Positions 2,134-11,781 of a stretch of 11,781 bases of DNA are shown here, in pieces; the stretch's first letter is position 1, and every line of letters begins with the position of its first letter. A model generated the notes under the pieces. That model had not been told where the DNA came from, searched no databases, and worked only from the letters and a program-made list of their open reading frames with translations. The position numbers and the translations under genes are program-made. The stretch covers positions 1 to 11,781 of IMG/VR virus record IMGVR_UViG_3300026877_000093. One strand, 5' to 3'.

Positions 2134-2178
2134 GCTTTAAATTAAAAGGTAAAAATTTTTTGAATTTTACCAGTATCA

Positions 2179-2192
2179 TTTATATTTTTGTT
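2179..2192 (+). promoter_or_regulatory. TATA box for a leaderless transcript of the fibre gene
   Basis: TTTATATT at -33..-26 from ATG 2212, with no RBS upstream of the ATG. Confidence 0.5.
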
Positions 2193-2211
2193 TTGCAGTA
2201 ATATAAATAAT

Positions 2212-5200
2212 ATGAGTACAATATTTGACTTAGGAGCTATTGGTACGTTTTTCTCTGATGAGATATCAGCGTTAGAAAACTTTGCAAATTGGGTAAGTTC
2301 AACATTTATAAATTTTATGAACGCAATAACCACAGATATACAAAATACATTTAGTTTTATAGGCCAAGCAATTAGCGATATACCTACTTTTATGCAAAAT
2401 ATTGCAACTGATTTTCTCACAATTTTACAAAATTTTGTCCAAACTGCGATACCAATTATACAAGGTTTTTTAAGTTGGCTTGAACAACAAATTGTAAACG
2501 CTTTTCAAGTTTTATCATCAATCGCTTCACAATTTATAAATGATGCTTATGGTTTTTTTCAAAACATTGCAAATGTGTTTTCGCAAATAATTGCAACAGT
2601 TGTGCAAGACTTTTTATCCGGCTTTGGTTCAAATATGTTGCGCATAGCGCCGGCAATTTCACAAATTGTACAATTTTTAACTCCTTTTATAGCTCCGATA
2701 ACAATTGGCAAATTTTTACCTGCAATTTCAGAAAAATTAGCTGAAATTTTACCTGAAATTGAAATTTCTTTGGCACCAATTGGTTTAGGTGGTAGAATCC
2801 CAATAAAATTTGGAGAAATTATAAAAGCTTTTGCAGAATCTGGAGTTGATTTTTTAAATGAAGTTAGACAAGAAATACAAGTTACTCTTAAGGAATTTTT
2901 AAAAGAACCTTTTGTTGCAGATTTTAAAATAACTGCAAGAGAAATATTTAATAACATAGGTCTTGGAGATTTACCGTTTGCTGATCCACCATTTCGAGAA
3001 ATTGCGAAATGGGTAGCTGTTAGGTCATTTTCCGAAATTCAAGACCATTTAAGTGAAACAATTTTATTAACTGGTTTCCCCGCTTGGTTTACTAACGCTT
3101 ATTTAACACCTCCGGCTAATGATTTTGTACCTTTAAACCCTATATTTAAACCCGTCTCAATTCGTGATGTTATTTTAGGTGCACAATTCGGAATTTTGAA
3201 TTTTGACGCTGTTTCACAATATTCATATAATAATTTAATAACTCCAAGAACTGCACAATTAATGTATAAAAATGAGACGGCACGTTTATTGCAAAAAGCA
3301 GTTGAAGAAGGCATTAGACAATTTGTAGTAACACCTTCGCAAGCTTATGAAGAAATTATTAAAAATATTAATTTAGCCGGCAAAGACCTATTTTTAAAAG
3401 TTTTTGACCTTGAATACCAATACGCAACACAAAGACTTATAAGGCAATTTTTAAGATCACTTTTAAGTAGGGCATTAACAAATTTTGGAAGGCCTTACAT
3501 TGATTTAAAGTTTTTACAAACAACAATACAAACTTTATTTAAAAGTTTAGGCTATCCAACACAGGTAGAACAAGTTTTTAATATCATGATTGAAGAATCG
3601 CAAATTGTTTATACTAACCAATTGTTATTAACGCAATTACAACAAATTGTGAGATTGGGGATATTTAATGAAAAAGAAATAAAATCAGAATTAAAAGCTA
3701 ATAATTTTAATGAAAATGTAGCACTAGCAATTTTACAAGGAGAGCTTAAATACATACAATTACAACATTTGCTAAAAGAATTTCAGTTTAAATTACAAAA
3801 TTATATTATAAGTAGTAGAGACGCAGAAAAAGGATTAAAAAGCTTAGGTTTCGATAATTCAATAATTTCTGAGACAATTTTTGAGTACCAAACTGCACCA
3901 CTTATAAAATATCAAATTTCGCAAATTGAAAGTTTAGCCAGAAAAGGGTATTTAAGTGTTGACGAAATTAAAAAAGAGCTAAATGCAATAGGTGTTATAA
4001 AAGAGTTTGAAGATGTGTTTTTAAATTACCTAAACCAAGAAATTGCCATATCTTCAACTTTAAATATACTAAGACAACAATTAAGAAGCTTTTTAGTTGA
4101 TCCCAAATTTGTGGAAACAGAATTAAGAAAATTAAAAGTAAATGATTATTTGGTAAATGAAATAATACAAGAAGAATATAATATAAACATTGCAAAACTC
4201 CAATTTTCATTAATTGAAAGTATTGCAAAAGTTCTTTATTTCGACCAACAACAATTAAATACAGAACTAGGAAAAATTGTAAAAGATAAAACTGCAATTG
4301 ACATTTATACACAAAAGTTTTATTTTGAATACATATATCCAAAAATTATAAGTTATTATACACAGTTGGCAAGACACGGCATTTCTGCAAATATTTCAAA
4401 ATTACCGAAAGATATTGTAGAATATGAAATTAAACCGGCAATTCAAGTTTTTCAATTAACAACAGAATTAGAATATATAAAAACATTATTAAAAGATTTA
4501 CAAATAACTCCAACTTCTGCAATAAATAGACTTGAAAATTTAGGTATGCAAAAAGATTTAGCTAATTTATTTGTACAAACTTACATACCCACATTTTACA
4601 GTTTACACACAATTATTAGTAATATAGTACAAGGAGAACTTTTCAAAGTTGGTAAAATACCAGTAAACTTAGGTAATGCCGAAAATGAATTAAGAAAATT
4701 AGGAATTCCAGATAATCAAATAAAAGTGTTGTTGGAACAATACGCTTCAACATTTGGTTTGGAAATTTGGAGAAAATATTTACCTTCACTTTCTAACATT
4801 GAAAATGCAATCAAATATAATTATCCGCTTAATCAACTTGTTGAATATTCGTTTATACCATCAGAACTGTTAAATTTACACGTTAATTTATTTCAACAAA
4901 TTTTTATAGGAGAATATGTACAATCTCTTAAAAATGAATATATCCAACTTTTAGTTTACGGCGTGCAAAATACACAGCTAGAAAGTTTATTAAAGCAATA
5001 TGGTATTAATGACGTTTTATTAGGTATTTACAAATTATCAGCACAAATTAGAAAATTATTAATGGCTTACCAAGAACTTTACATTACACCTTCAAAAGCT
5101 TTAACAATAAGTGAATATGTATCAAATCCAACACAGTTATTGCAAAAAGTATTTAGTGAATTTCAAGTTCCTAGTGATTTACAAAATACTTATCTCGAGT

Positions 5201-5388
5201 ATGCAATAAATAGAAGAGTTAGAACTTACATAAACGAAATAATCTCGACAATCAGTTTATTATTTGAAAAACAGAAAATTGACTTGAATACTGCACAATC
5301 ATACTTACAACAACTCAAGAAATATGGTTTGACTGATGAAGAAGTACAATTAATAATATTAAATTGGCAATTACGCTCAGCTTACTAA
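2212..5388 (+). CDS. Large minor virion protein / terminal fibre protein (SIRV2 ORF1070, gp38-like), 1058 aa
   Basis: ATG at 2212 preferred over TTG at 2188. Largest ORF, helical with 11-aa and 48-aa periodicities. Size and synteny match the rudiviral fibre protein. Confidence 0.88.
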   Translation: MSTIFDLGAIGTFFSDEISALENFANWVSSTFINFMNAITTDIQNTFSFIGQAISDIPTFMQNIATDFLTILQNFVQTAIPIIQGFLSWLEQQIVNAFQVLSSIASQFINDAYGFFQNIANVFSQIIATVVQDFLSGFGSNMLRIAPAISQIVQFLTPFIAPITIGKFLPAISEKLAEILPEIEISLAPIGLGGRIPIKFGEIIKAFAESGVDFLNEVRQEIQVTLKEFLKEPFVADFKITAREIFNNIGLGDLPFADPPFREIAKWVAVRSFSEIQDHLSETILLTGFPAWFTNAYLTPPANDFVPLNPIFKPVSIRDVILGAQFGILNFDAVSQYSYNNLITPRTAQLMYKNETARLLQKAVEEGIRQFVVTPSQAYEEIIKNINLAGKDLFLKVFDLEYQYATQRLIRQFLRSLLSRALTNFGRPYIDLKFLQTTIQTLFKSLGYPTQVEQVFNIMIEESQIVYTNQLLLTQLQQIVRLGIFNEKEIKSELKANNFNENVALAILQGELKYIQLQHLLKEFQFKLQNYIISSRDAEKGLKSLGFDNSIISETIFEYQTAPLIKYQISQIESLARKGYLSVDEIKKELNAIGVIKEFEDVFLNYLNQEIAISSTLNILRQQLRSFLVDPKFVETELRKLKVNDYLVNEIIQEEYNINIAKLQFSLIESIAKVLYFDQQQLNTELGKIVKDKTAIDIYTQKFYFEYIYPKIISYYTQLARHGISANISKLPKDIVEYEIKPAIQVFQLTTELEYIKTLLKDLQITPTSAINRLENLGMQKDLANLFVQTYIPTFYSLHTIISNIVQGELFKVGKIPVNLGNAENELRKLGIPDNQIKVLLEQYASTFGLEIWRKYLPSLSNIENAIKYNYPLNQLVEYSFIPSELLNLHVNLFQQIFIGEYVQSLKNEYIQLLVYGVQNTQLESLLKQYGINDVLLGIYKLSAQIRKLLMAYQELYITPSKALTISEYVSNPTQLLQKVFSEFQVPSDLQNTYLEYAINRRVRTYINEIISTISLLFEKQKIDLNTAQSYLQQLKKYGLTDEEVQLIILNWQLRSAY

Positions 5389-5485: not shown

Positions 5486-7078
5486 ATGGCTTTACCATAC
5501 ACTGTTAATTATAAATTGCCCTTAGAATATTTAACTTTGCAAGAGTGGAATAACTTCATACAAAATTTATTATTTTTAAATCAATATGGCTCAGCTCAAT
5601 TGTTACAATATTTCCAAAACGGTAGTTTTCAAAATTTAAATGAAGTAATTGCAAAGTATTTAAGTGTTGCAAGTTTGAAAATAAACGGTTATAACGCTTT
5701 ACATAACTTGTCAGAACCACAAGCGTATACTTTTGGCACGGGAAACCAACAACCGTTTCAAAACATGGCAAACAGACCGTTTTTTGGATTAGAAACTATA
5801 ACACCGCCAACTCTAAACTTTCAAGTACAATTACAACCGTTGGCTAAACAATTGCAATTATTAATTCCAAATTTAATAAGTAAAATTACCGTACCAAACT
5901 ATGTAGCAGGCACTCAATTTCAATTTTCCGGTTCTGCGACTGTACAAAATTTAATACAAAATTATTTTGACCCTTCATATTTACAAACTTGGAGAGAAAT
6001 AATAATTCAAAATTTAGGCAATAACGCAGTGCAAATAAACAATGCAATATATTTAATGCCTAAACAATGTTTAAAAATAACTGCGAGTTCTCCATCAGAA
6101 ATACAATTAACTGCACAAAGTCCGACACTTTTAAGCGAAACAATTGGTTTTATTGGGACTCCAATATCTACTTATGTAATTACAATAACAAATAATCAGC
6201 CAAACCCAACACCTTCACCGTTTCAACAATTGCTAATTCTAAATTTATCAACTCTTTTATCAAGTGCAAGTCAGCTTTTAAACTTGCAATTTTGTTTAGA
6301 CCCTCAATGTAATACTCCATTATATGCTTGGATTGAACAAAATAATTTAACTAATGCTTATATTTGGGTAAAAATCCCAACTTCAATTCCAGCAAATGGT
6401 TCATTAACTATTTATATGTTTATACAAAATTCAATTCAATACCCTTACACTGGAATGGCCCCATATTTATCTTCTACATATGCACAATATGATAATGGAG
6501 GAAATGTATTTAATTTTTATGATAATTTTAAAGGGACTACATTAAACCCGGCATGGACAGTCCCTTCAGGTTTTAGTTACCAAGTAAATAACGGTTTTAT
6601 CGCTGAACCTTCCAGCGGTTCTGCTCCTTCTGCATATAATTTAAATGTTCAAGAAACATCATCGATAATAGCAGAATGGGCTTTAAATATGTCATCTACC
6701 ACATATTCTAGAAATTATACATATTTTCAGCTAAATAGGTATACAGGATACTCAAACATGCATATGTTAGGCGTATCAGGGTCTGATACACTTTTTAATA
6801 ATAATACAAAAATTAATACTGTTTCTATTTCTTCGTCAGGAATACAAATTTTTGGAGTACGGAATGGTGGGACAACAGTAACATGGTATTATGAAGGTAA
6901 TTCGTATACTAATAATTCTGTAACTGCAGAAACTGATTATCTTGCACTTGGATGGGCTTATAACGCACAAAGTTACAATTTTCCTACAATATATTGGGTT
7001 AGGACTAGAGCTTATCCTCCAAATGGAGTAATGCCTTCAAATTCTCAACCGCAACAAACTATAGTATTTGTAGGTTAA
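5486..7078 (+). CDS. Minor virion protein (SIRV2 ORF564, gp39-like) with a C-terminal DUF2341-like / lectin-like region, 530 aa
   Basis: Follows the fibre gene. From aa ~229 it has DUF2341-type motifs (ITITNNQ..PTPSPFQQ, PLYAWIE, IWVKIP.SIPANGSLTIYM, YDNG.NVF.FYDNF) and ends in WVRTRAYPPNGVMPS. Confidence 0.8.
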   Translation: MALPYTVNYKLPLEYLTLQEWNNFIQNLLFLNQYGSAQLLQYFQNGSFQNLNEVIAKYLSVASLKINGYNALHNLSEPQAYTFGTGNQQPFQNMANRPFFGLETITPPTLNFQVQLQPLAKQLQLLIPNLISKITVPNYVAGTQFQFSGSATVQNLIQNYFDPSYLQTWREIIIQNLGNNAVQINNAIYLMPKQCLKITASSPSEIQLTAQSPTLLSETIGFIGTPISTYVITITNNQPNPTPSPFQQLLILNLSTLLSSASQLLNLQFCLDPQCNTPLYAWIEQNNLTNAYIWVKIPTSIPANGSLTIYMFIQNSIQYPYTGMAPYLSSTYAQYDNGGNVFNFYDNFKGTTLNPAWTVPSGFSYQVNNGFIAEPSSGSAPSAYNLNVQETSSIIAEWALNMSSTTYSRNYTYFQLNRYTGYSNMHMLGVSGSDTLFNNNTKINTVSISSSGIQIFGVRNGGTTVTWYYEGNSYTNNSVTAETDYLALGWAYNAQSYNFPTIYWVRTRAYPPNGVMPSNSQPQQTIVFVG

Positions 7079-7085
7079 TAAAACA

Positions 7086-8036
7086 ATGACCATCGCGACT
7101 ACTACTCAATGCACTGATGTTTACCAAATTGCTAATTTGTTATCTCCACCAAGTAAATATTCAATAATTTCTTCTTCACTATGGAATGAAATTGTACAAG
7201 ATTTATATTTAACATATAGCGTATTTCAATATATTAATTTTTTATCAGCATTTCCATATACAGATTATATATTTCCTGCAATTCAACAATTTAATAATTT
7301 TCCGCAAAATTTTACGCCTTATACTTTTACCCCTTTACTTAATGCCCAAACGGGTACACCGCTTAACGCTGATGATTTTAACAACTTAATAAACGCAATT
7401 ATAGAATTAGCAAATATGGCTAATATACAATTACAAACAAAATTAAATTATGTACAACCGAACGAAATTGTTAAAGCTTCGCAATTTGCAAATGTAATTT
7501 ATGCAGTAAATCAATTATTAACTTTTAATTATAATACTTATTTTATTTTAAGTTGTTCAGGTGCCGAATTTATTAACCTACTAAGCACGCAAACTGCATT
7601 TTTAAATGTATTAATATACAACTTAAGCAATAACCTATCAGTTTCAAACAATACTTATATAAAAAATTTACTTTTAAATTCTTTGAGTCAAAACATTTAT
7701 AACTATGGAATAATTGATAAATTAGTAATTGTATCAAGTAATGGAAACATTTATCTTTATAATGATGCATTTATTAACTCTTTAACCATAAATAATAATA
7801 TTCAAAATATTTATGTAAATGATAGTTCTTCAATTGAAACATTATCAATTTCATACAATACTGGTAAAATTTACCTTAATGGAAATGCATTTATTAATAC
7901 TTTAACCATAAATACCCAAAATGGTTATATTTATGTAAATGATAATTCCGTAATAAATAATTTAATTTGTAATACAAATGTAGGAGCAGTTATTATAGCA
8001 CCTACTGCAGTAGTTATAAATAACCAGTGCACTTAA
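7086..8036 (+). CDS. Conserved rudiviral protein (SIRV2 ORF309-like) with C-terminal 20-aa beta-solenoid-type repeats, 316 aa
   Basis: Starts 7 nt after the ORF530 stop. Asn/Ile-rich repeats of the form IY(L/V)NxxxxIxxLxIxxxxG. Confidence 0.75.
   Translation: MTIATTTQCTDVYQIANLLSPPSKYSIISSSLWNEIVQDLYLTYSVFQYINFLSAFPYTDYIFPAIQQFNNFPQNFTPYTFTPLLNAQTGTPLNADDFNNLINAIIELANMANIQLQTKLNYVQPNEIVKASQFANVIYAVNQLLTFNYNTYFILSCSGAEFINLLSTQTAFLNVLIYNLSNNLSVSNNTYIKNLLLNSLSQNIYNYGIIDKLVIVSSNGNIYLYNDAFINSLTINNNIQNIYVNDSSSIETLSISYNTGKIYLNGNAFINTLTINTQNGYIYVNDNSVINNLICNTNVGAVIIAPTAVVINNQCT
7741..7980 (+). repeat. Imperfect intragenic tandem repeat, 4 x 60 bp arranged as 2 x 120 bp
   Basis: ATGCATTTATTAA..CTTTAACCATAAATA is shared by the units at 7741 and 7861. 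ATATTTATGTAAATGATA is shared by the units at 7801 and 7921. Confidence 0.8.
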
Positions 8037-8513
8037 TTATAATTTACAAAATACAAATTCTCTATTATCATCAGTTATGAAAGTCAAAATTGTACCGTAA
8101 AGTTTTTTCATCAATTCAAATCTATTCTCAGTCCAGTCATGAATAGCAATACAATATTGTTTATATTTCTGCAATTCTTCAAATCTCAAATTTTTTTCAC
8201 ATCCTTCACAATCCATAATAAAAATGTCAGTATTCGGATACTCTTTACCAGTCCATTCCCCATTTATCTCAACTTTTTCACAAATTTGAAATTCTTTGCA
8301 AACTTTTTCTTTAAACCTCTTGTTTAACTCACCACTTTTTTCAAAACCAATTACTTTTTTAGCGTCTTTCAAAAGAAAATACAAAGCAGAACTTCCGCAA
8401 TCATTTCCAATTATTGTAATTGTTTTATCTTTAACATCTAATTTTCCATATGCTAAATTAAATTCATACCAATAACAACATCCTAATTTACAAAAATAAT
8501 CGTTATAATTCAT
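8037..8513 (-). CDS. SAM-dependent methyltransferase, FkbM-like (SIRV2 ORF158b-like), 158 aa
   Basis: Motif I-like TITIIGNDCGSSALYF, then AKKVIGFE (acidic end of beta-2) and FIMDCEGCE (FkbM K.D.EG.E-type). Size and synteny match. Confidence 0.85.
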   Translation of the reverse strand: MNYNDYFCKLGCCYWYEFNLAYGKLDVKDKTITIIGNDCGSSALYFLLKDAKKVIGFEKSGELNKRFKEKVCKEFQICEKVEINGEWTGKEYPNTDIFIMDCEGCEKNLRFEELQKYKQYCIAIHDWTENRFELMKKLYGTILTFITDDNREFVFCKL

Positions 8514-9319
8514 GAACTTATTACCTCAAACAAAGCGTAAACTGTAGTAGGGCCTGTGGCCCAAGCGTAAACGTTTGCCGGGTTATTTACATGTATCTCT
8601 AAACTATCATTTGGCAAAATCGGAAAGTTATTATAAATGTTGTTACCAATGTAAACTATATAATTACTTAAGTTTTGTAAAATTATTCTTGCAGTTTGCA
8701 ATGCCGAACCGGAATAAAGCGGGTTAGGTGTAGTACCAACATTAAGTTGTAAACCTTGTATAGTAGGAGGTGCTAAATATAACGTAAGCTGGTTTATTGT
8801 ATTTGCCAAACCGACAGTTGCTAAATAAATATAAAAAAGTGAATAAGCTAAATAATTAGAAACAGCATAAACTGCATTTTGCAAAGGAATTCCTAATTGT
8901 TGAGATACAGAATTTATTAAATTGTAAAATGACGCATAAAAATTTTGTAAATCTTGTTGTACTACGTTTGAAATTTCTTGCGGTAAATTAACAAGCGAAT
9001 TATAAAGTTGTTCATTACTGTACAAAATTGCGTTTATTTGGTCATTAGCAGTTGAAATAAAACCAGCAATATAAATAGGATCAAGTTCAGTTATTACAGG
9101 CTGGCCAGCAACATAAACATCATTATAAAAATAACCGGCATCGGCAATTATCCAATTCGGGATTACCAAATTCCCATTTTGGAGAATTGATGTTACTGCA
9201 TTTCCGCCGGTTTGATATAATTGGTTTAATAACAAAACGGCAGTATTCCACATACTTGATGTCAAACGCTGGAATGGTGAAGCCAACAAATCCGAAATTG
9301 ATGTATAAGTTACACTCAC
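8510..9319 (-). CDS. Conserved rudiviral protein (SIRV2 ORF269-like), 269 aa from a GTG start; probable paralogue of the ORF530 N-terminal part
   Basis: GTG at 9319 gives 269 aa (MSVTYTSISDLLASPFQRLTSSMWN...). The extension to 9364 in the ORF track runs through the promoter. Its stop overlaps the methyltransferase start (ATGA). Confidence 0.8.
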   Translation of the reverse strand: MSVTYTSISDLLASPFQRLTSSMWNTAVLLLNQLYQTGGNAVTSILQNGNLVIPNWIIADAGYFYNDVYVAGQPVITELDPIYIAGFISTANDQINAILYSNEQLYNSLVNLPQEISNVVQQDLQNFYASFYNLINSVSQQLGIPLQNAVYAVSNYLAYSLFYIYLATVGLANTINQLTLYLAPPTIQGLQLNVGTTPNPLYSGSALQTARIILQNLSNYIVYIGNNIYNNFPILPNDSLEIHVNNPANVYAWATGPTTVYALFEVISS

Positions 9320-9389
9320 AATTATTATTTTCTTACTTGGCAAAAATAAACATGCACAGCACATATATTATATTATGTATATGTGCTGT
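9320..9389 (-). promoter_or_regulatory. Promoter region of ORF269-methyltransferase, including a 12-bp inverted repeat
   Basis: TTTATTTTT-GCC with G at -22, ATATACATAATAT at -63..-51, and inverted repeat ACAGCACATATA (9356-9367) / TATATGTGCTGT (9378-9389). Confidence 0.65.
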
Positions 9390-9420
9390 AACACTTGTTG
9401 TAAATTAGTCCCGTAAAAAT

Positions 9421-9456
9421 TGTTATTTGTCATAAATTACAAATATAATTTGGTAA
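9421..9456 (+). promoter_or_regulatory. Putative GTC-type promoter of the glycosyltransferase
   Basis: TGTTATTT-GTCATA-N16-TGGTAA, matching the layout upstream of the GNAT gene. Confidence 0.45.
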
Positions 9457-9463
9457 CAAGAAA

Positions 9464-10534
9464 ATGAGTAAAACAATTTATTATGTACATCCTATGCACC
9501 ACGATGTTTCATTTAAATTTGTAGCAAAAGAACATATAAAAATGTTAAAAGAAAAATATACAGTTTATGAAATACCAATTTTATCTTTTTACCAATTTAC
9601 ACCTTTTAAATTTCCAATTTCCATAATTCATCCATTTTTTTACAGTATGTGGTATTGGGGAAAAATTGAATTTTCATTCTTTGAAACTTACAGAACTAAA
9701 GTAAGTGCCGTTTTAGGTGTAGAAGTTGCAGATACTAATAAAATTGCCGAAAAATACATCAATTATGCAAATAATTACGCCGATGCAATAATATTAAATT
9801 CGCAGTGGTCAATTAACGCATTTATAAACTCCGGCTTAAAAATACCAGCTTATAAAGTCGTACATAATTTTAACCCAAAATTATTAGCAAATGATAAAGA
9901 ATTAGAAATAGATAAACACGTTTCTTATATTGAAAAAATAAAAAATGAAAAGAAAATCAAATTAATATTTATTTCATTATGGCACTCGGATTTTAGAAAA
10001 GGAACCGATATTTTTCATGAAATAGCAAAAAAACTACAAAAAGAAAGAGATGATATTTACTTTTTAGTTAAAAGCGGTATGCCAAAAAATGATTTTAATG
10101 ATTTAAAAATGTTTAATGTAACAGGAGTAGTAAGTTTTGATAATATAGTTAAAATGTACAGAATTTCGGATTTATATTTATTAACTTCAAGAGGCGGGAG
10201 TTTTGAATTAAACGGTTTAGAAGCGTTTATTTCAAAAATTCCCGCAATTGCGACAAAAGGCGGGGCGTGGGAAGAATATTACCCATCTCAATTAAAAGAT
10301 TTACTAGTTGATCCTTGCAATTCTCCAACAGTTTTGCCGGGTAACCCAATACATGTAGGCCAGGGCGTGGAAATGTGTATTGATAAAGCAGTAAACAAAA
10401 TTTTGAAAGTTTTAGATAATTATGATAATTACAAAGCTAAAATTGAAGAAAATCATAGTTTTTGGCTAGAAAATTTTAGTTACCAAAATGTGAAAAAACA
10501 ACTAATAAATGTAGTTGAGAAATACATAAAATAA
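9464..10534 (+). CDS. GT-B fold glycosyltransferase (GT4 / Glycos_transf_1-like; SIRV2 ORF356-like), 356 aa
   Basis: Motifs ADAIILNSQWS, RKGTD, MYRISDLYLLTSRGGSFELNGLEA and PAIATKGGAWEEY. Same length as SIRV ORF356. Confidence 0.92.
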   Translation: MSKTIYYVHPMHHDVSFKFVAKEHIKMLKEKYTVYEIPILSFYQFTPFKFPISIIHPFFYSMWYWGKIEFSFFETYRTKVSAVLGVEVADTNKIAEKYINYANNYADAIILNSQWSINAFINSGLKIPAYKVVHNFNPKLLANDKELEIDKHVSYIEKIKNEKKIKLIFISLWHSDFRKGTDIFHEIAKKLQKERDDIYFLVKSGMPKNDFNDLKMFNVTGVVSFDNIVKMYRISDLYLLTSRGGSFELNGLEAFISKIPAIATKGGAWEEYYPSQLKDLLVDPCNSPTVLPGNPIHVGQGVEMCIDKAVNKILKVLDNYDNYKAKIEENHSFWLENFSYQNVKKQLINVVEKYIK

Positions 10535-10549
10535 AACCAAAATAAACAT

Positions 10550-10557
10550 AAAAAAAA
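10550..10557 (-). terminator. Oligo(T) archaeal terminator after acrIII-1
   Basis: T8 run on the minus strand, 13 nt past the stop at 10571. Confidence 0.5.
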
Positions 10558-10570
10558 TATTTAAAATAGA

Positions 10571-10930
10571 TTATGAAGAACTATAAACGTAAGTAAAACC
10601 AGTTAGCACTTTTATAAGTTTTAACTCATACCCAATTTTTTCGATTTCTTCAATTGTTTTTAGGACTTGCCCTTCTGCCAACCGCTGTTTTAAAGTAAAT
10701 ACTATAGCCTCATCACCTTCATCAAAATAAACTTGTATTCTGTTTACTGGAACTTCTACACCTAGCAACATGCTTAGTAATTTAGCAGTAACATCATGTC
10801 CAATTGCAGATATAAATTTTTGGTTTTGTACCAATTTTTTAGTATCATCAAGCGATATATTTCTTATAGCAACTACAATATTCTTTTTTGTAGGTATTAT
10901 TGGCGAATTTAATAAATATAAATTACCCAT
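10571..10930 (-). CDS. acrIII-1: AcrIII-1 viral ring nuclease (DUF1874; STIV B116 / AFV3 ORF109 / SIRV1 gp29 family), anti-type III CRISPR cA4 nuclease, 119 aa
   Basis: Family motifs LYLLNS, SAIGH (H45), NR (R64) and QRLAEG (R83, E86), spaced as the SIRV1 gp29 residues H47/R66/R85/E88. GGTGA RBS 6 nt upstream of the ATG. Confidence 0.93.
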   Translation of the reverse strand: MGNLYLLNSPIIPTKKNIVVAIRNISLDDTKKLVQNQKFISAIGHDVTAKLLSMLLGVEVPVNRIQVYFDEGDEAIVFTLKQRLAEGQVLKTIEEIEKIGYELKLIKVLTGFTYVYSSS

Positions 10931-10936
10931 TTTAAA

Positions 10937-11107
10937 TCACCAACATTCTTGCATATAACTTAAAACTCTTTTTTCTGAAATTCCTAGCAATTTCGCTATT
11001 TCTGACAAAGTATAACCTTGTACTGCAAGTTCATGCACTAGCTTAACAAAATCTTCTTTGTTTTGTATTACATATGTTTTGTTTCCAACTTGTACCTCTT
11101 TTTTCAT
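10937..11107 (-). CDS. Rudiviral Gp1-like HTH DNA-binding protein (SIRV1 ORF56a / SIRV2 ORF83 family), 56 aa
   Basis: ATG at 11107 gives MKKEVQVGNKTYVIQNKEDFVKLVHELAVQGYTLSEIAKLLGISEKRVLSYMQECW, with a clear HTH. It closely resembles the short SIRV1 Gp1 as recalled. The 74-aa call extends through the promoter. Confidence 0.85.
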   Translation of the reverse strand: MKKEVQVGNKTYVIQNKEDFVKLVHELAVQGYTLSEIAKLLGISEKRVLSYMQECW

Positions 11108-11117
11108 TTTGTCTATC

Positions 11118-11150
11118 CCATTATAAAATAAGAAATATGACATATTTATA
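11118..11150 (-). promoter_or_regulatory. TATA + GTC promoter of the gp1-acrIII-1 operon
   Basis: Minus strand TATAAATAT-GTCATA-N15-TGG. Confidence 0.65.
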
Positions 11151-11211
11151 CTATACTCCACAAAGCTATATTCCTAATATCATATATACAACTCGGCATT
11201 CTTTTACTTTA

Positions 11212-11314
11212 TTTGATTATAATCAAAGTAATGAAATAAATTATAGATGAAAAACAAATAAAATTAGAACTTATAATTATAATCACAATAATGCAATAAA
11301 TTATTGACAAAAAA
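11212..11314. repeat. 16-bp perfect palindrome overlapping an imperfect 39-bp direct repeat with a 60-bp period
   Basis: TTTGATTATAATCAAA at 11212-11227. 11216-11254 and 11276-11314 match at 33/39 positions. Confidence 0.65.
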
Positions 11315-11421
11315 ATAGAAAAAAAGAAAATAATTAGAAATAAGAAAGAATATAAAAATACCAAAACTAATAACAAGAAAAGAAAACAAAAAAGAAAAAA
11401 TATTTAACTTAAATTAAAAAA

Positions 11422-11676
11422 TTATTGAATTAAATATACTCGCTTTTTCATCCTTCCCGTTTCAGGGTTAATTTCCGTTTTTACGGAAATTAAACCCCTT
11501 TGTTGCAGTTTCTTTAACCTCGCTAACATATAATATTGATATTTTGATGCCCAAGCAAAATGAGATATTATATCTTCTTGCCATAATGAACCACCATTCT
11601 CAGCCAAAAGCTGGAGAATGGCTTTTTGCTTCTTACCCAATTTTTTCACGTTTATTTGTTTTTTCTCTCCTTCCAT
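11422..11676 (-). CDS. Winged helix-turn-helix protein (MarR-like), 84 aa
   Basis: Helix 1 LGKKQKAILQLLAENGG, recognition helix ending LKKLQQRGLI, wing ETGRMKKRVYL. RBS TGAGGT 8 nt upstream. Confidence 0.85.
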   Translation of the reverse strand: MEGEKKQINVKKLGKKQKAILQLLAENGGSLWQEDIISHFAWASKYQYYMLARLKKLQQRGLISVKTEINPETGRMKKRVYLIQ

Positions 11677-11727
11677 TTCCCTTTACCTCACTCTATATAT
11701 CTCACTCCTCACTTTTAAATTTTTCTG
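11677..11727 (-). promoter_or_regulatory. Strong BRE-TATA promoter and RBS of the wHTH gene
   Basis: Minus strand AGAAAAA-TTTAAAAG (11726-11712), then three AGTGAG copies and the TGAGGT RBS. Confidence 0.65.
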
Positions 11728-11781
11728 TAAACTTATACACACAAATTTTTACCTTTACTACCTTTCTCCGTTTTTTAACCT

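What the first reader, a model, noticed from the sequence alone, without database searches (positions are those of the whole stretch)
10571..11150. Lipothrixvirus-like AcrIII-1 placed in an operon behind the Gp1-like HTH gene
The sequence (LYLLNSPIIP, F.SAIGH..TA.LLS.LLGV.VP.NR.Q, F.LKQRL.EG.V.KT.EE.EKIGYEL) matches my recollection of AFV3 ORF109 better than SIRV1 gp29 (YLANAFSINML type). Its GGTGA RBS is built into the last codons of gp1 (TGG TGA), with a 6-nt gap. SIRV Gp1 genes are terminal and expressed very early. Inference: xenologous replacement moved the anti-type III CRISPR nuclease from the core to an early terminal operon, with the HTH possibly acting as an Aca-like regulator.
Basis: partly seen in the sequence, partly recalled or inferred. 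Interest (0 to 1): 0.65.

Follow-up and report, generated by a model that had tools for sequence, protein, structure and literature searches.

The report
Viral ring nuclease in aca8 operon
An uncultivated hot-spring rudivirus has a DUF1874/AcrIII-1 gene (a nuclease family that destroys the cyclic tetra-adenylate alarm signal of type III CRISPR) placed 6 bases behind its terminal early regulator gene aca8, which should give it the early expression that the late-expressed SIRV1/SIRV2 copy lacks.

Summary
Window 10571-10930(-) encodes a 119-aa PF08960/DUF1874 protein (E 8.5e-33). Its best solved relative is AFV3-109 (E 4.8e-29), far ahead of SIRV1 gp29 (E 7e-10). All family-invariant cA4-site residues are kept, including H45. 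Six bases upstream ends a 56-aa HTH gene (10937-11107), a homologue of SIRV1 gp01 / SIRV2 gp01/gp54, which has been published as Aca8. The junction TGG-TGA-TTTAAA-ATG is real.

A 98%-identical complete genome (25,459 bp, 1,300-bp inverted terminal repeats) shows the layout ITR, wHTH, aca8, DUF1874, then a convergent glycosyltransferase. It has one DUF1874 copy, and the SIRV1 gp29 core slot is empty.

Every other aca8 checked ends in a stop codon followed by a T-tract terminator and has no DUF1874 directly behind it. SRV has one 203 nt further down. Nine metagenome contigs of this lineage keep the junction. Two metatranscriptome assemblies each hold a contig that crosses it.

The "xenologous replacement from the core" story is not shown. 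The closest relatives (Usarudivirus) lack DUF1874 altogether, and a lipothrixvirus donor cannot be resolved. The Aca idea and an AcrIII-1 gene next to aca8 (SRV) are already published. This is a new variant of a known kind. It bears on the dispute over whether viral ring nucleases act as native anti-CRISPRs.

The parts
10571..10930 (-). DUF1874 / AcrIII-1-family (viral ring nuclease) gene, 119 aa, second cistron
   Evidence: PF08960 at E 8.5e-33. AFV3-109 2j6b at E 4.8e-29. N8, H45, T48, R64, R83 and E86 align with SIRV1 gp29 N8, H47, T50, R66, R85 and E88. dN/dS between variants is 0.07-0.09.
10931..10941 (-). Junction: GGTGA Shine-Dalgarno (10937-10941, from TGG plus the TGA stop of aca8) and 6-nt spacer TTTAAA (10931-10936). 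The two ORFs are in the same frame.
   Evidence: The motif and spacer are unchanged in all 9 contigs of this lineage and 95-100% identical over 10925-10945 in 7 variants. All other aca8 homologues checked have TAA/TAG, or TGA followed by other sequence.
10937..11107 (-). aca8 homologue (gp1-type HTH, 56 aa, start at MKKEVQ), first cistron
   Evidence: PDB 2x48 (SIRV1 ORF55) at E 1.9e-12, aligned from residue 19 of the long ORF. tblastn to SIRV2 gp54 at E 9.5e-18. phrog_7067 at E 1e-24. The start position is kept as GTG in variants.
11136..11150 (-). Core promoter: TATA box TATAAATA followed by TGTCATA, ending 28 nt before the aca8 start codon
   Evidence: The same TATA-then-TGTCATA arrangement lies 17-33 nt before the start of at least 10 other ORFs of the complete genome, and none lies inside aca8 upstream of DUF1874.
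11211..11308 (-). Two copies (11211-11248 and 11271-11308) of a 38-nt regulatory module. The proximal copy contains a perfect 16-bp palindrome at 11212-11227. Candidate operator.
   Evidence: There are 4 copies in the 25.5-kb genome: two here and one each upstream of the 145-aa and 296-aa genes of the other terminal arm.
10550..10557 (-). T8 tract 14-21 nt after the DUF1874 stop: likely archaeal terminator of the bicistron
   Evidence: On the minus strand there is no T-run of 6 or more between the aca8 promoter and this point.
11422..11676 (-). 84-aa winged-HTH gene, first gene inward from the ITR, separate transcription unit
   Evidence: phrog_9113 at E 6.7e-26. Homologues sit in the terminal arms of Usarudiviruses and ARV1. 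Several T6-T7 tracts follow it.
2134..2187 (+). Empty slot where SIRV1/2/3 carry gp29/gp37 (DUF1874), between the gp28-like ORF (1921-2133) and the 1066-aa ORF (2188-5388)
   Evidence: Window ORFs compared with SIRV1 gp25-gp30 and SIRV2 gp35-gp38. There is a single PF08960 match in the window and in the complete relative.
9464..10534 (+). Convergent core glycosyltransferase that bounds the terminal arm
   Evidence: Pfam Glyco_trans_1_4. It is 75-80% aa identical to Usa- and Icerudivirus, 66.5% to SRV, 55-60% to ARV/SSRV1 and 25% to AFV9.

Best explanation
The 119-aa ORF is a functional DUF1874/AcrIII-1-family ring nuclease that cleaves cyclic tetra-adenylate. It belongs to the AFV3-109 / ARV / ATV branch of the family. 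In this uncultivated rudivirus lineage (hot-spring metagenomes; slightly closer to Usarudivirus than to Icerudivirus) it is the second cistron of a two-gene transcript with aca8. That transcript starts at the canonical viral promoter 28 nt upstream of aca8, in the terminal anti-defence arm of the genome, and ends at a T8 tract after the nuclease gene. Translation of the nuclease uses a GGTGA Shine-Dalgarno created by the TGG-TGA end of aca8. Because aca8 is an immediate-early gene in SIRV2, the nuclease would be made at the onset of infection. Published work shows that this timing is what a viral ring nuclease needs to neutralise type III CRISPR signalling. Aca8, or the neighbouring wHTH protein, probably shuts the unit down later through the repeated palindrome-bearing module.

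Shown: domain, conserved residues, gene order, junction, terminal position, conservation across the population, purifying selection, contigs in RNA libraries that bridge the junction.

Inferred: enzymatic activity, single transcript, early timing, repression by Aca8.
For: Family and active site. Ring-nuclease activity has been demonstrated for SIRV1 gp29 and for B. subtilis YddF (bioRxiv 10.1101/778746); placing YddF on the window's side of the deepest split in my tree is an inference from 'YddF family' labels on bacterial hits, not a tested placement.

Not a gp29 orthologue: tree and AU tests.

aca8 identity.

Complete relative with 1,300-bp ITRs, one DUF1874 copy and the order ITR-wHTH-aca8-DUF1874.

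Operon signals:
- 6-nt gap and GGTGA.
- GGTGA is also used at the same spacing by two other genes of the genome.
- No TATA/TGTCATA promoter inside aca8, while at least 10 other ORFs have one.
- No T-run of 6 or more between the promoter and the T8 after DUF1874.
- The isolates' and UViG aca8 homologues end TAA/TAG followed by a T-tract; among 9 further metagenome loci 7 end TAA and 2 end TGA, all with a T-rich run within 45 nt. None has an adjacent DUF1874.

Population conservation: 9 metagenome contigs with aca8 84-100% identical keep the GGTGA-TTTAAA-ATG junction. dN/dS for DUF1874 is 0.07-0.09.

RNA libraries: a 288-nt contig (10802-11089) in X11 and a 440-nt contig (10672-11111) in X17, from two studies, cross the junction. 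They are the longest virus-matching pieces listed for each run. No RNA contig covers 11241-11440.

Literature: aca8 is expressed immediately after infection and every aca8 gene carries the early regulatory sequence (PMC11065993). Early expression of gp29 restores Acr activity in SIRV2 (bioRxiv 10.1101/2023.01.10.523387).
Against: - No enzymatic, timing or infection data exist for this virus, and its host is unknown.
- Contigs from RNA libraries prove neither a single transcript nor strand, and DNA carry-over cannot be excluded (warning).
- A TATA-like stretch inside the 3' part of aca8 (about 10952-10966, roughly 29 nt before the nuclease ATG) could serve as an internal promoter.
- The BRE and flanks of the aca8 promoter here differ from the SIRV P_ADE consensus, so early timing is extrapolated from homology of the gene, not of the motif.
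- The same genome also encodes an AcrIIIB1 homologue at the other terminus. The authors of the SIRV2 study regard that as lowering the odds that a ring nuclease is the anti-type-III factor.
- SIRV2 gp37 has a non-Acr role in native infection.
Confidence: 0.6

Rival explanations
1. The gene is a DUF1874 protein whose main role is not anti-CRISPR, for example inhibition of the host lysine methyltransferase as shown for SIRV2 gp37, or another cA4-independent function. Its place behind aca8 would then reflect only that terminal arms accept accessory genes.
For: SIRV2 gp37 has no Acr activity in native infection and binds SiL_1451. About two thirds of archaeal viral ring-nuclease genes lie outside anti-defence islands (bioRxiv 10.1101/2023.01.10.523387). 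The genome already has an AcrIIIB1 homologue.
Against: The published reason for gp37's failure is late expression, which this arrangement removes. All cA4-contacting invariant residues are kept under strong purifying selection. The SiL_1451-binding residues are reported to be conserved only in a few SIRV-like proteins, and this protein is in the other clade.
Confidence: 0.2
2. The two genes are adjacent but transcribed separately. The nuclease would have its own weak promoter inside the 3' end of aca8, with timing independent of aca8.
For: A TATA-like AT-rich stretch lies about 29 nt upstream of the nuclease ATG. The genome is 27% G+C, so such stretches are common. Contigs cannot prove one transcript.
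Against: No TATA-plus-TGTCATA signature is present, although at least 10 other ORFs of this genome have one. Shine-Dalgarno motifs in Sulfolobales typically mark internal operon genes, while first genes are leaderless or have short leaders (general knowledge). The aca8 terminator present in all other lineages is missing here. RNA-library contigs span the junction in two studies.
Confidence: 0.12
3. One reading: an ancestral core gp29 was lost and replaced xenologously by a lipothrixvirus gene that landed in the terminal operon.
For: The core slot is empty. The best single hits are betalipothrixviruses and ATV at 49-53% identity. A sister position to the lipothrixvirus clade is not rejected (p 0.50). 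The core glycosyltransferase is 76% identical to SIRV1-3, whose DUF1874 is only 35% identical.
Against: All Usarudivirus records lack DUF1874 by tblastn, and three were confirmed by HMM. SIRV11 has the same Hjc-gp28-ORF1058 order without it. A core copy is therefore known only in Icerudivirus and may have been gained there, since gp29 groups with STIV and AFV1. The lipothrixvirus clade (98/93) excludes the window protein. Aquificae-type and ARV/ATV-type proteins are equally close.
Confidence: 0.15
4. The aca8-then-DUF1874 order next to the ITR is old and shared with Stygiolobus rod-shaped virus. It would have been lost in Usa- and Icerudiviruses rather than newly assembled here.
For: SRV has ITR, ORF57 (aca8), ORF148 (DUF1874 N-terminal domain), then further genes and a convergent glycosyltransferase. 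A window-plus-SRV clade is not rejected (p 0.13).
Against: In the best tree SRV ORF148 groups with a fusellovirus protein on a very long branch, outside the 98/93 clade that holds the window protein. The constrained tree is 15 log-likelihood units worse. SRV has a 203-nt gap, a TAA stop and a T-tract after aca8. Its nuclease is listed with its own early motif.
Confidence: 0.2

Closest known systems
AcrIII-1: SIRV1 gp29 / SIRV2 gp37 (viral ring nuclease, PDB 2x4i, 6scf)
   Same: Same Pfam family. The catalytic His and the invariant cA4-contact residues N, T, R, R and E are conserved.
   Different: Only 35% identity and a different deep clade (AU p 5e-5). gp29/gp37 sit in the middle/late Hjc operon of the genome core, and that slot is empty here. 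This copy is terminal and sits behind aca8.
AFV3-109 and relatives (betalipothrixviruses, ATV ORF117, ARV2 gp37, SSRV1 gp33)
   Same: Closest sequences at 49-53% identity, with the same N-terminal LY(I/L)LNS motif type and the same large clade (98/93 support).
   Different: It is not nested in any of these subclades. Their genes are not next to an aca8 gene. AFV3 ORF109 lies near an AcrIIIB1 homologue.
Stygiolobus rod-shaped virus ORF57 (Aca8) and ORF148 (AcrIII-1 homologue)
   Same: The only other case found of a DUF1874 gene immediately downstream of aca8 next to the ITR and facing the glycosyltransferase. It is already listed as an anti-defence gene.
   Different: SRV has a 203-nt gap, a TAA stop and a T-tract after aca8, and so probably its own promoter. 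Its protein is 148 aa with a C-terminal extension, is very divergent, and lies in another part of the tree.
Aca8 (SIRV2 gp01/gp54, SIRV1 gp01, PDB 2x48)
   Same: A 55-56-aa HTH with 42-58% identity, the same position beside the ITR, and a TATA box about 40 nt before the start codon.
   Different: Elsewhere aca8 is a single gene ending at a T-tract terminator. Here it is fused into an operon by a TGA stop that doubles as part of the next gene's ribosome-binding site.
Bacterial acr-aca operons (anti-CRISPR gene plus autorepressor HTH)
   Same: A small HTH regulator and an anti-CRISPR-family gene share one tightly spaced unit behind a strong promoter that has palindromic repeats nearby.
   Different: The order is reversed, with the regulator first. 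The promoter is archaeal. Repression and operator binding are untested. The palindromes lie about 60-160 nt upstream of the TATA box and do not overlap it.
Engineered SIRV2 Para-gp29 (bioRxiv 10.1101/2023.01.10.523387)
   Same: A ring nuclease placed in the terminal arm under early expression, which was sufficient for anti-type-III activity.
   Different: That virus was constructed in the laboratory. This one is a natural lineage found in several metagenomes.

Membership tests
AcrIII-1 / DUF1874 viral ring nuclease | PF08960 (STIV_B116-like) domain over its full length | tested here: met
   E 8.5e-33, 113 bits against a cut-off of 26, profile positions 1-101 of 101. phrog_5063 at E 1.1e-35.
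AcrIII-1 / DUF1874 viral ring nuclease | Absolutely conserved catalytic histidine (H47 of SIRV1 gp29) | tested here: met
   H45 aligns with H47. The column is invariant in all 39 sequences.
AcrIII-1 / DUF1874 viral ring nuclease | Conserved cA4-contact residues (N8, T50, R66, R85 of gp29) and the invariant E88 | tested here: met
   N8, T48, R64, R83 and E86 are present. The semi-conserved S11, N13 and S49 are I, P and V, as in the whole AFV3/YddF-type branch.
AcrIII-1 / DUF1874 viral ring nuclease | Homodimeric fold with the cA4 pocket at the interface | not tested
   Inferred only from 53% identity to the solved AFV3-109 dimer. No model was built.
AcrIII-1 / DUF1874 viral ring nuclease | cA4 cleavage activity | not testable with these tools
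   Needs purified protein and a cA4 assay with an H45A control.
AcrIII-1 as a bona fide anti-CRISPR | Expression at the onset of infection and protection from type III targeting | tested here: inconclusive
   The context is favourable: aca8 operon, terminal arm, shared regulatory module. RNA-library contigs cross the junction. There are no timing or infection data.
Aca8 | Sequence homology to SIRV2 gp01/gp54 (55-aa HTH form) | tested here: met
   PDB 2x48 at E 1.9e-12. tblastn to SIRV2 gp54 at E 9.5e-18. Alignment at 42-58% identity.
Aca8 | Location beside the ITR in a terminal arm with other anti-defence genes | tested here: met
   In the complete relative the gene lies at 1848-2018, 548 nt inside the 1,300-bp ITR boundary. 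An AcrIIIB1 homologue is the first gene of the other arm.
Aca8 | Preceded by a strong promoter within a virus-specific regulatory sequence shared with other early genes | tested here: met
   TATA plus TGTCATA at 11136-11150. A 38-nt module is shared with two other terminal-arm units, 4 copies per genome. Promoter strength and timing are not measured.
Aca8 | Binds the regulatory sequence and represses early genes | not testable with these tools
   This is still only a prediction for SIRV2 Aca8 as well (PMC11065993).
acr-aca operon | Both genes on one transcript | tested here: inconclusive
   For: 6-nt gap, GGTGA, no terminator, no internal canonical promoter, and junction-spanning contigs in two metatranscriptome assemblies. 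Contigs cannot prove a single RNA.
acr-aca operon | acr gene upstream and aca gene downstream (usual bacterial order) | tested here: not met
   The order here is aca8 first, nuclease second.

The most novel reading that the evidence does not exclude
This rudivirus lineage would be a natural answer to the 'timing problem' that makes SIRV2's ring nuclease useless as an anti-CRISPR. By converting the aca8 stop and terminator into a ribosome-binding site, the virus made a cA4-degrading nuclease part of its immediate-early, self-limiting aca8 transcript. It would then be the first archaeal virus with a true aca-acr operon and a natively effective AcrIII-1, working alongside an AcrIIIB1 homologue at the other genome end.
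Probability: 0.4. Interest if true: 0.65.

Novelty: new variant of a known kind. Interest (0 to 1): 0.5.

Why it matters
Whether viral DUF1874 ring nucleases are real anti-CRISPRs in natural infections is contested. In SIRV2 the gene is expressed too late to work, and only 2 of 24 archaeal viral homologues were reported under early control. This lineage puts a well-conserved ring nuclease into the earliest transcription unit through a minimal, traceable change: a TAA stop plus terminator becomes TGA plus ATG. The arrangement persists in many hot-spring samples. That provides a concrete natural cassette for testing the timing hypothesis and Aca8 autoregulation. It also shows that, within one virus family, the gene occupies different sites with different expression contexts (demonstrated only for SIRV2).

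Tried and rejected
1. Apparent 190-aa Aca8-DUF1874 fusion protein P0001. The contig translates to it only with TGA read as W, so it is a gene-calling artefact. The TGA stop is intact.

2. Host identification through the CRISPR repeat seen as loose ends in RNA-run contigs. There is no exact 25-nt match in GTDB representative genomes. A 21-nt core gave two single chance hits in unrelated bacterial MAGs. The host stays unknown.

3. The sigma-70 promoter and bacterial hairpin-terminator scan is uninformative for an archaeal virus: 9 promoter-like sites against 8.6 expected, and 0 terminators.

4. The word-index protein search returned mostly unnamed metagenome proteins and none of the viral isolates, so named viral sequences had to be fetched locus by locus.

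5. The first metagenome scan with the broad Aca8 alignment failed for lack of a conserved block. It was repeated with a narrower alignment.

6. The idea that TGTCATA marks early promoters was rejected. It precedes core and structural gene units too.

7. No structure prediction, complex prediction or large profile search was run. Family assignment was already unambiguous.
Full report
**What is in the window.** The window is a 38%-complete IMG/VR rudivirus fragment. On the minus strand, 10571-10930 encodes a 119-aa protein. It matches Pfam PF08960 (STIV_B116-like, formerly DUF1874) over the whole profile at E 8.5e-33. Against solved structures the best match is AFV3-109 (2j6b, E 4.8e-29, about 53% identity). 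STIV B116 (1.3e-11) and SIRV1 ORF114/gp29 (2x4i, 7.1e-10) score far lower.

The residues that a 39-sequence alignment shows to be invariant are all present. They include the catalytic histidine: N8, H45, T48, R64, R83 and E86 correspond to gp29 N8, H47, T50, R66, R85 and E88 (residue roles from bioRxiv 10.1101/778746).

**The upstream gene.** The long ORF 10937-11161 aligns with SIRV1 ORF55 (PDB 2x48) only from its residue 19 (E 1.9e-12). The real gene is therefore 10937-11107, 56 aa. It has homologues near one or both ends of all SIRV-type rudiviruses, SBRV1 and SRV. SIRV2 gp01/gp54 of this family has been named Aca8, a putative anti-CRISPR-associated regulator. It is expressed immediately after infection, its 55-aa form is the real product, and every aca8 gene carries the early regulatory sequence (PMC11065993).

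**The junction.** The minus strand reads TGG TGA TTTAAA ATG. GGTGA, the Sulfolobales Shine-Dalgarno core (general knowledge), is formed by the last sense codon and the stop of aca8, and ends 6 nt before the nuclease ATG. GGTGA occurs 19 times in 50,918 positions of the complete relative. It is used at the same spacing by two other genes there.

The isolates' and UViG aca8 homologues (SIRV1-4, SRV, one UViG) end in TAA or TAG followed at once by a T-rich terminator-like tract. Of nine further metagenome loci, seven end in TAA and two in TGA followed by unrelated sequence. None has a DUF1874 gene adjacent. In this lineage the terminator is gone, the stop is TGA and the nuclease follows. On the minus strand there is no T-run of 6 or more between the aca8 promoter and a T8 tract 14-21 nt after the nuclease stop.

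**Promoter and regulatory module.** A TATA box followed by TGTCATA (11136-11150) ends 28 nt before the aca8 start. The same signature lies 17-33 nt before at least 10 other ORFs of the genome, core and structural genes included. It is therefore the general viral promoter type. None lies inside aca8 ahead of the nuclease.

Upstream lie two copies of a 38-nt module, 11211-11248 and 11271-11308. The proximal copy holds a perfect 16-bp palindrome at 11212-11227. The complete genome has only two more copies of the module. They lie in the intergenic regions ahead of the 145-aa gene and the 296-aa ATPase gene of the opposite terminal arm. This fits the published notion of a virus-specific regulatory sequence shared by terminal early or anti-defence genes. 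Which regulator binds it is unknown.

**Genome context.** IMGVR_UViG_3300026625_000038 is 98.2% identical to the window over the shared 7.2 kb. It is complete: 25,459 bp with 1,300-bp perfectly inverted terminal repeats. Its left arm runs ITR, an 84-aa wHTH gene, aca8, DUF1874, then the convergent core glycosyltransferase. The nuclease is the third gene from the end, 2.0-2.4 kb in. There is one PF08960 match in the whole genome.

The other arm begins with a 256-aa AcrIIIB1 homologue. It is 34.5% identical to SIRV2 gp48 (E 1.8e-39) and 51.5% identical to SIRV7 gp49, which in SIRV7 is the gene behind aca8.

**The core slot.** SIRV1 has gp25(-), gp26, Hjc, gp28, gp29 (DUF1874) and gp30 (ORF1070), and SIRV2 has the same order. 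The window has the homologues in that order, but the gp28-like ORF ends at 2133 and the 1066-aa ORF starts at 2188. The slot is empty.

This is not special to this virus. No Usarudivirus record (SIRV4-11, OM4017xx) gave a tblastn hit with either DUF1874 query. An HMM search of the SIRV4, SIRV7 and SIRV11 records was also negative, with SRV as a positive control. SIRV11 shows the same Hjc-gp31-ORF1058 order.

**Phylogeny.** I built a careful IQ-TREE of 39 sequences: 22 named viral proteins plus 17 metagenome relatives. It separates a SIRV1/2 + STIV + AFV1 + SMV4 + SSRV2 clade (100/99) from a large clade (98/93). The large clade holds the window protein, betalipothrixviruses, ARV1/ARV2/SSRV1/ATV, a clade of Aquificae phages with hot-spring metagenome proteins, and a clade of other bacterial-phage and metagenome proteins. 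Within it the window protein and its 94% variant form one of four unresolved branches.

| Constrained clade (AU test) | p | Result |
|---|---|---|
| Window + SIRV1/2 | 5e-5 | rejected |
| Window + whole SIRV/STIV clade | 0.001 | rejected |
| Window + lipothrixviruses | 0.50 | not rejected |
| Window + ARV/ATV | 0.22 | not rejected |
| Window + SRV | 0.13 | not rejected |

The adjacent core glycosyltransferase gives a different picture:

| Virus group | Glycosyltransferase aa identity | DUF1874 aa identity |
|---|---|---|
| Usarudivirus | 75.5-79.5% | none present |
| SIRV1-3 | 75-76% | about 35% |
| SRV | 66.5% | no hit at E 1e-3 |
| ARV/SSRV1 | 55-60% | 42-49% |
| AFV9 | 25% | 40% |

The nuclease is clearly incongruent with the core genes. 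The donor and the direction (replacement, or gain into a lineage that never had a core copy) are not resolved.

**Precedent.** SRV has ITR, ORF57 (aca8), a 203-nt gap, ORF148 (a DUF1874 domain with a C-terminal extension), further genes, then the convergent glycosyltransferase. ORF148 is already listed as an AcrIII-1-type anti-defence gene with an early motif in the supplementary data of PMC11065993. Among all aca8 loci recovered from IMG/VR and JGI metagenomes, only SRV and the window lineage have a DUF1874 gene downstream. The tight operon form is specific to this lineage.

**Population data.** Nine metagenome contigs, with aca8 84-100% identical, keep the GGTGA-TTTAAA-ATG junction unchanged and keep the order wHTH-aca8-DUF1874-GT. 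Between variants, DUF1874 has dN/dS 0.07-0.09 and aca8 0.12-0.42. The neighbouring wHTH gene diverges much more, at 39-85% nucleotide identity. The promoter/module region stays 90-96% identical. The aca8 start codon position is kept as GTG in two variants.

**RNA evidence.** The stretch is held by 21 public runs, mostly hot-spring metagenomes and including three metatranscriptomes. I laid three RNA runs and one DUF1874-holding DNA run on 5800-11781. RNA run X11 has a 288-nt contig at 10802-11089, and RNA run X17 (another study, a variant strain) has a 440-nt contig at 10672-11111. Both cross the junction with more than 120 nt on each side, and each is the longest virus-matching piece listed for its run.

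No RNA contig covers 11241-11440, whereas the DNA run covers 10407-11368. X11 also covers the wHTH gene separately. This is what a bicistronic aca8-nuclease RNA separate from the wHTH RNA would give. Contigs show neither strand nor ends nor a single molecule, and DNA carry-over cannot be excluded, so I count it as supportive and not decisive.

**Why the position matters.** Martinez-Alvarez et al. (bioRxiv 10.1101/2023.01.10.523387) showed four things:
- SIRV2 gp37 is a middle/late product of the Hjc operon.
- It gives no protection against type III-B targeting in native infection.
- gp29 protects when expressed early from the terminal arm.
- Only 2 of 24 archaeal viral ring-nuclease genes are under the early anti-defence promoter.

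The present lineage places a conserved ring nuclease into the aca8 unit, which is the condition they identified as necessary. They also argue that co-occurrence with AcrIIIB1 lowers the likelihood of an Acr role, and this genome does have an AcrIIIB1 homologue. That is the main argument for the non-Acr rival.

**Verdict.** The components and the concept are known, and the tight aca8-nuclease operon is a new variant.

Noticed in passing
window about 6410-6448, 7006-7045, 7109-7150, 8461-8513, near 9291: Short matches in the metatranscriptome contigs are flanked by loose ends that look like Sulfolobales-type CRISPR repeats, ending in ATTGAAAG. Two repeat variants are present. Expressed CRISPR arrays in these springs therefore carry spacers against this virus.
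   Followed up: partly
L037 (G001) 1-1300 and L038, corresponding to G001 24160-25459; window 11655-11781: The 1,300-bp ITR runs 22 nt into the first gene of both arms. The 84-aa wHTH gene and the 256-aa AcrIIIB1 homologue therefore share one promoter and their first seven codons (MEGEKKQ).
   Followed up: partly
G001 23411-24181 (-), = L038 10411-11181: The first gene of the opposite arm is an AcrIIIB1 homologue: 34.5% identical to SIRV2 gp48 (E 1.8e-39) and 51.5% identical to SIRV7 gp49, the gene downstream of aca8 in SIRV7.
   Followed up: yes
G001 21329-22219 (-), = L038 8329-9219: A 296-aa P-loop ATPase (Pfam AAA_15 / AAA_21, the ATPase type of OLD/AbiEii-like systems) sits in the terminal arm behind a copy of the 38-nt module. 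Its function is unexplored.
   Followed up: no
G001 whole genome; window 11136-11150 and others: A TATA box followed by TGTCATA lies 17-33 nt upstream of at least 11 ORFs (counting aca8), including the Hjc-operon and glycosyltransferase units. It appears to be a genome-wide promoter signature of this virus.
   Followed up: partly
G001 (25,459 bp) compared with SIRV genomes of 32-36 kb: The genome is compact. Between the glycosyltransferase and aca8 it has only the nuclease gene, whereas SIRV7 has about 5 kb there with a permease, a tRNA-ribosyltransferase and others. By glycosyltransferase identity it is about equally far from Usarudivirus and Icerudivirus and is probably a separate species or genus.
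   Followed up: partly
window 10931-10939: aca8 and the nuclease ORF are in the same reading frame, separated only by TGA and two codons. Read-through of TGA would give a fusion protein. One database entry (P0001) shows exactly this, but only because the contig was called with TGA read as W.
   Followed up: yes
window 9384-11159: DNA run X5 has a contig joint that skips 1,774 nt (glycosyltransferase, nuclease and aca8) at depth 43, but with only 22 nt on the shorter side. It may be a variant lacking this block or an assembly artefact.
   Followed up: no
L065 640-801, L066 1119-1280: Two metagenome aca8 homologues (56% identical) also end TGG TGA but are followed by unrelated sequence that contains further GGTGA copies and no DUF1874. 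What follows them was not examined.
   Followed up: no
run X4: A run labelled 'hypersaline lake metagenome' holds 80% of the sampled words of this acidic-hot-spring virus stretch. This is probably a labelling or cross-sample issue.
   Followed up: no
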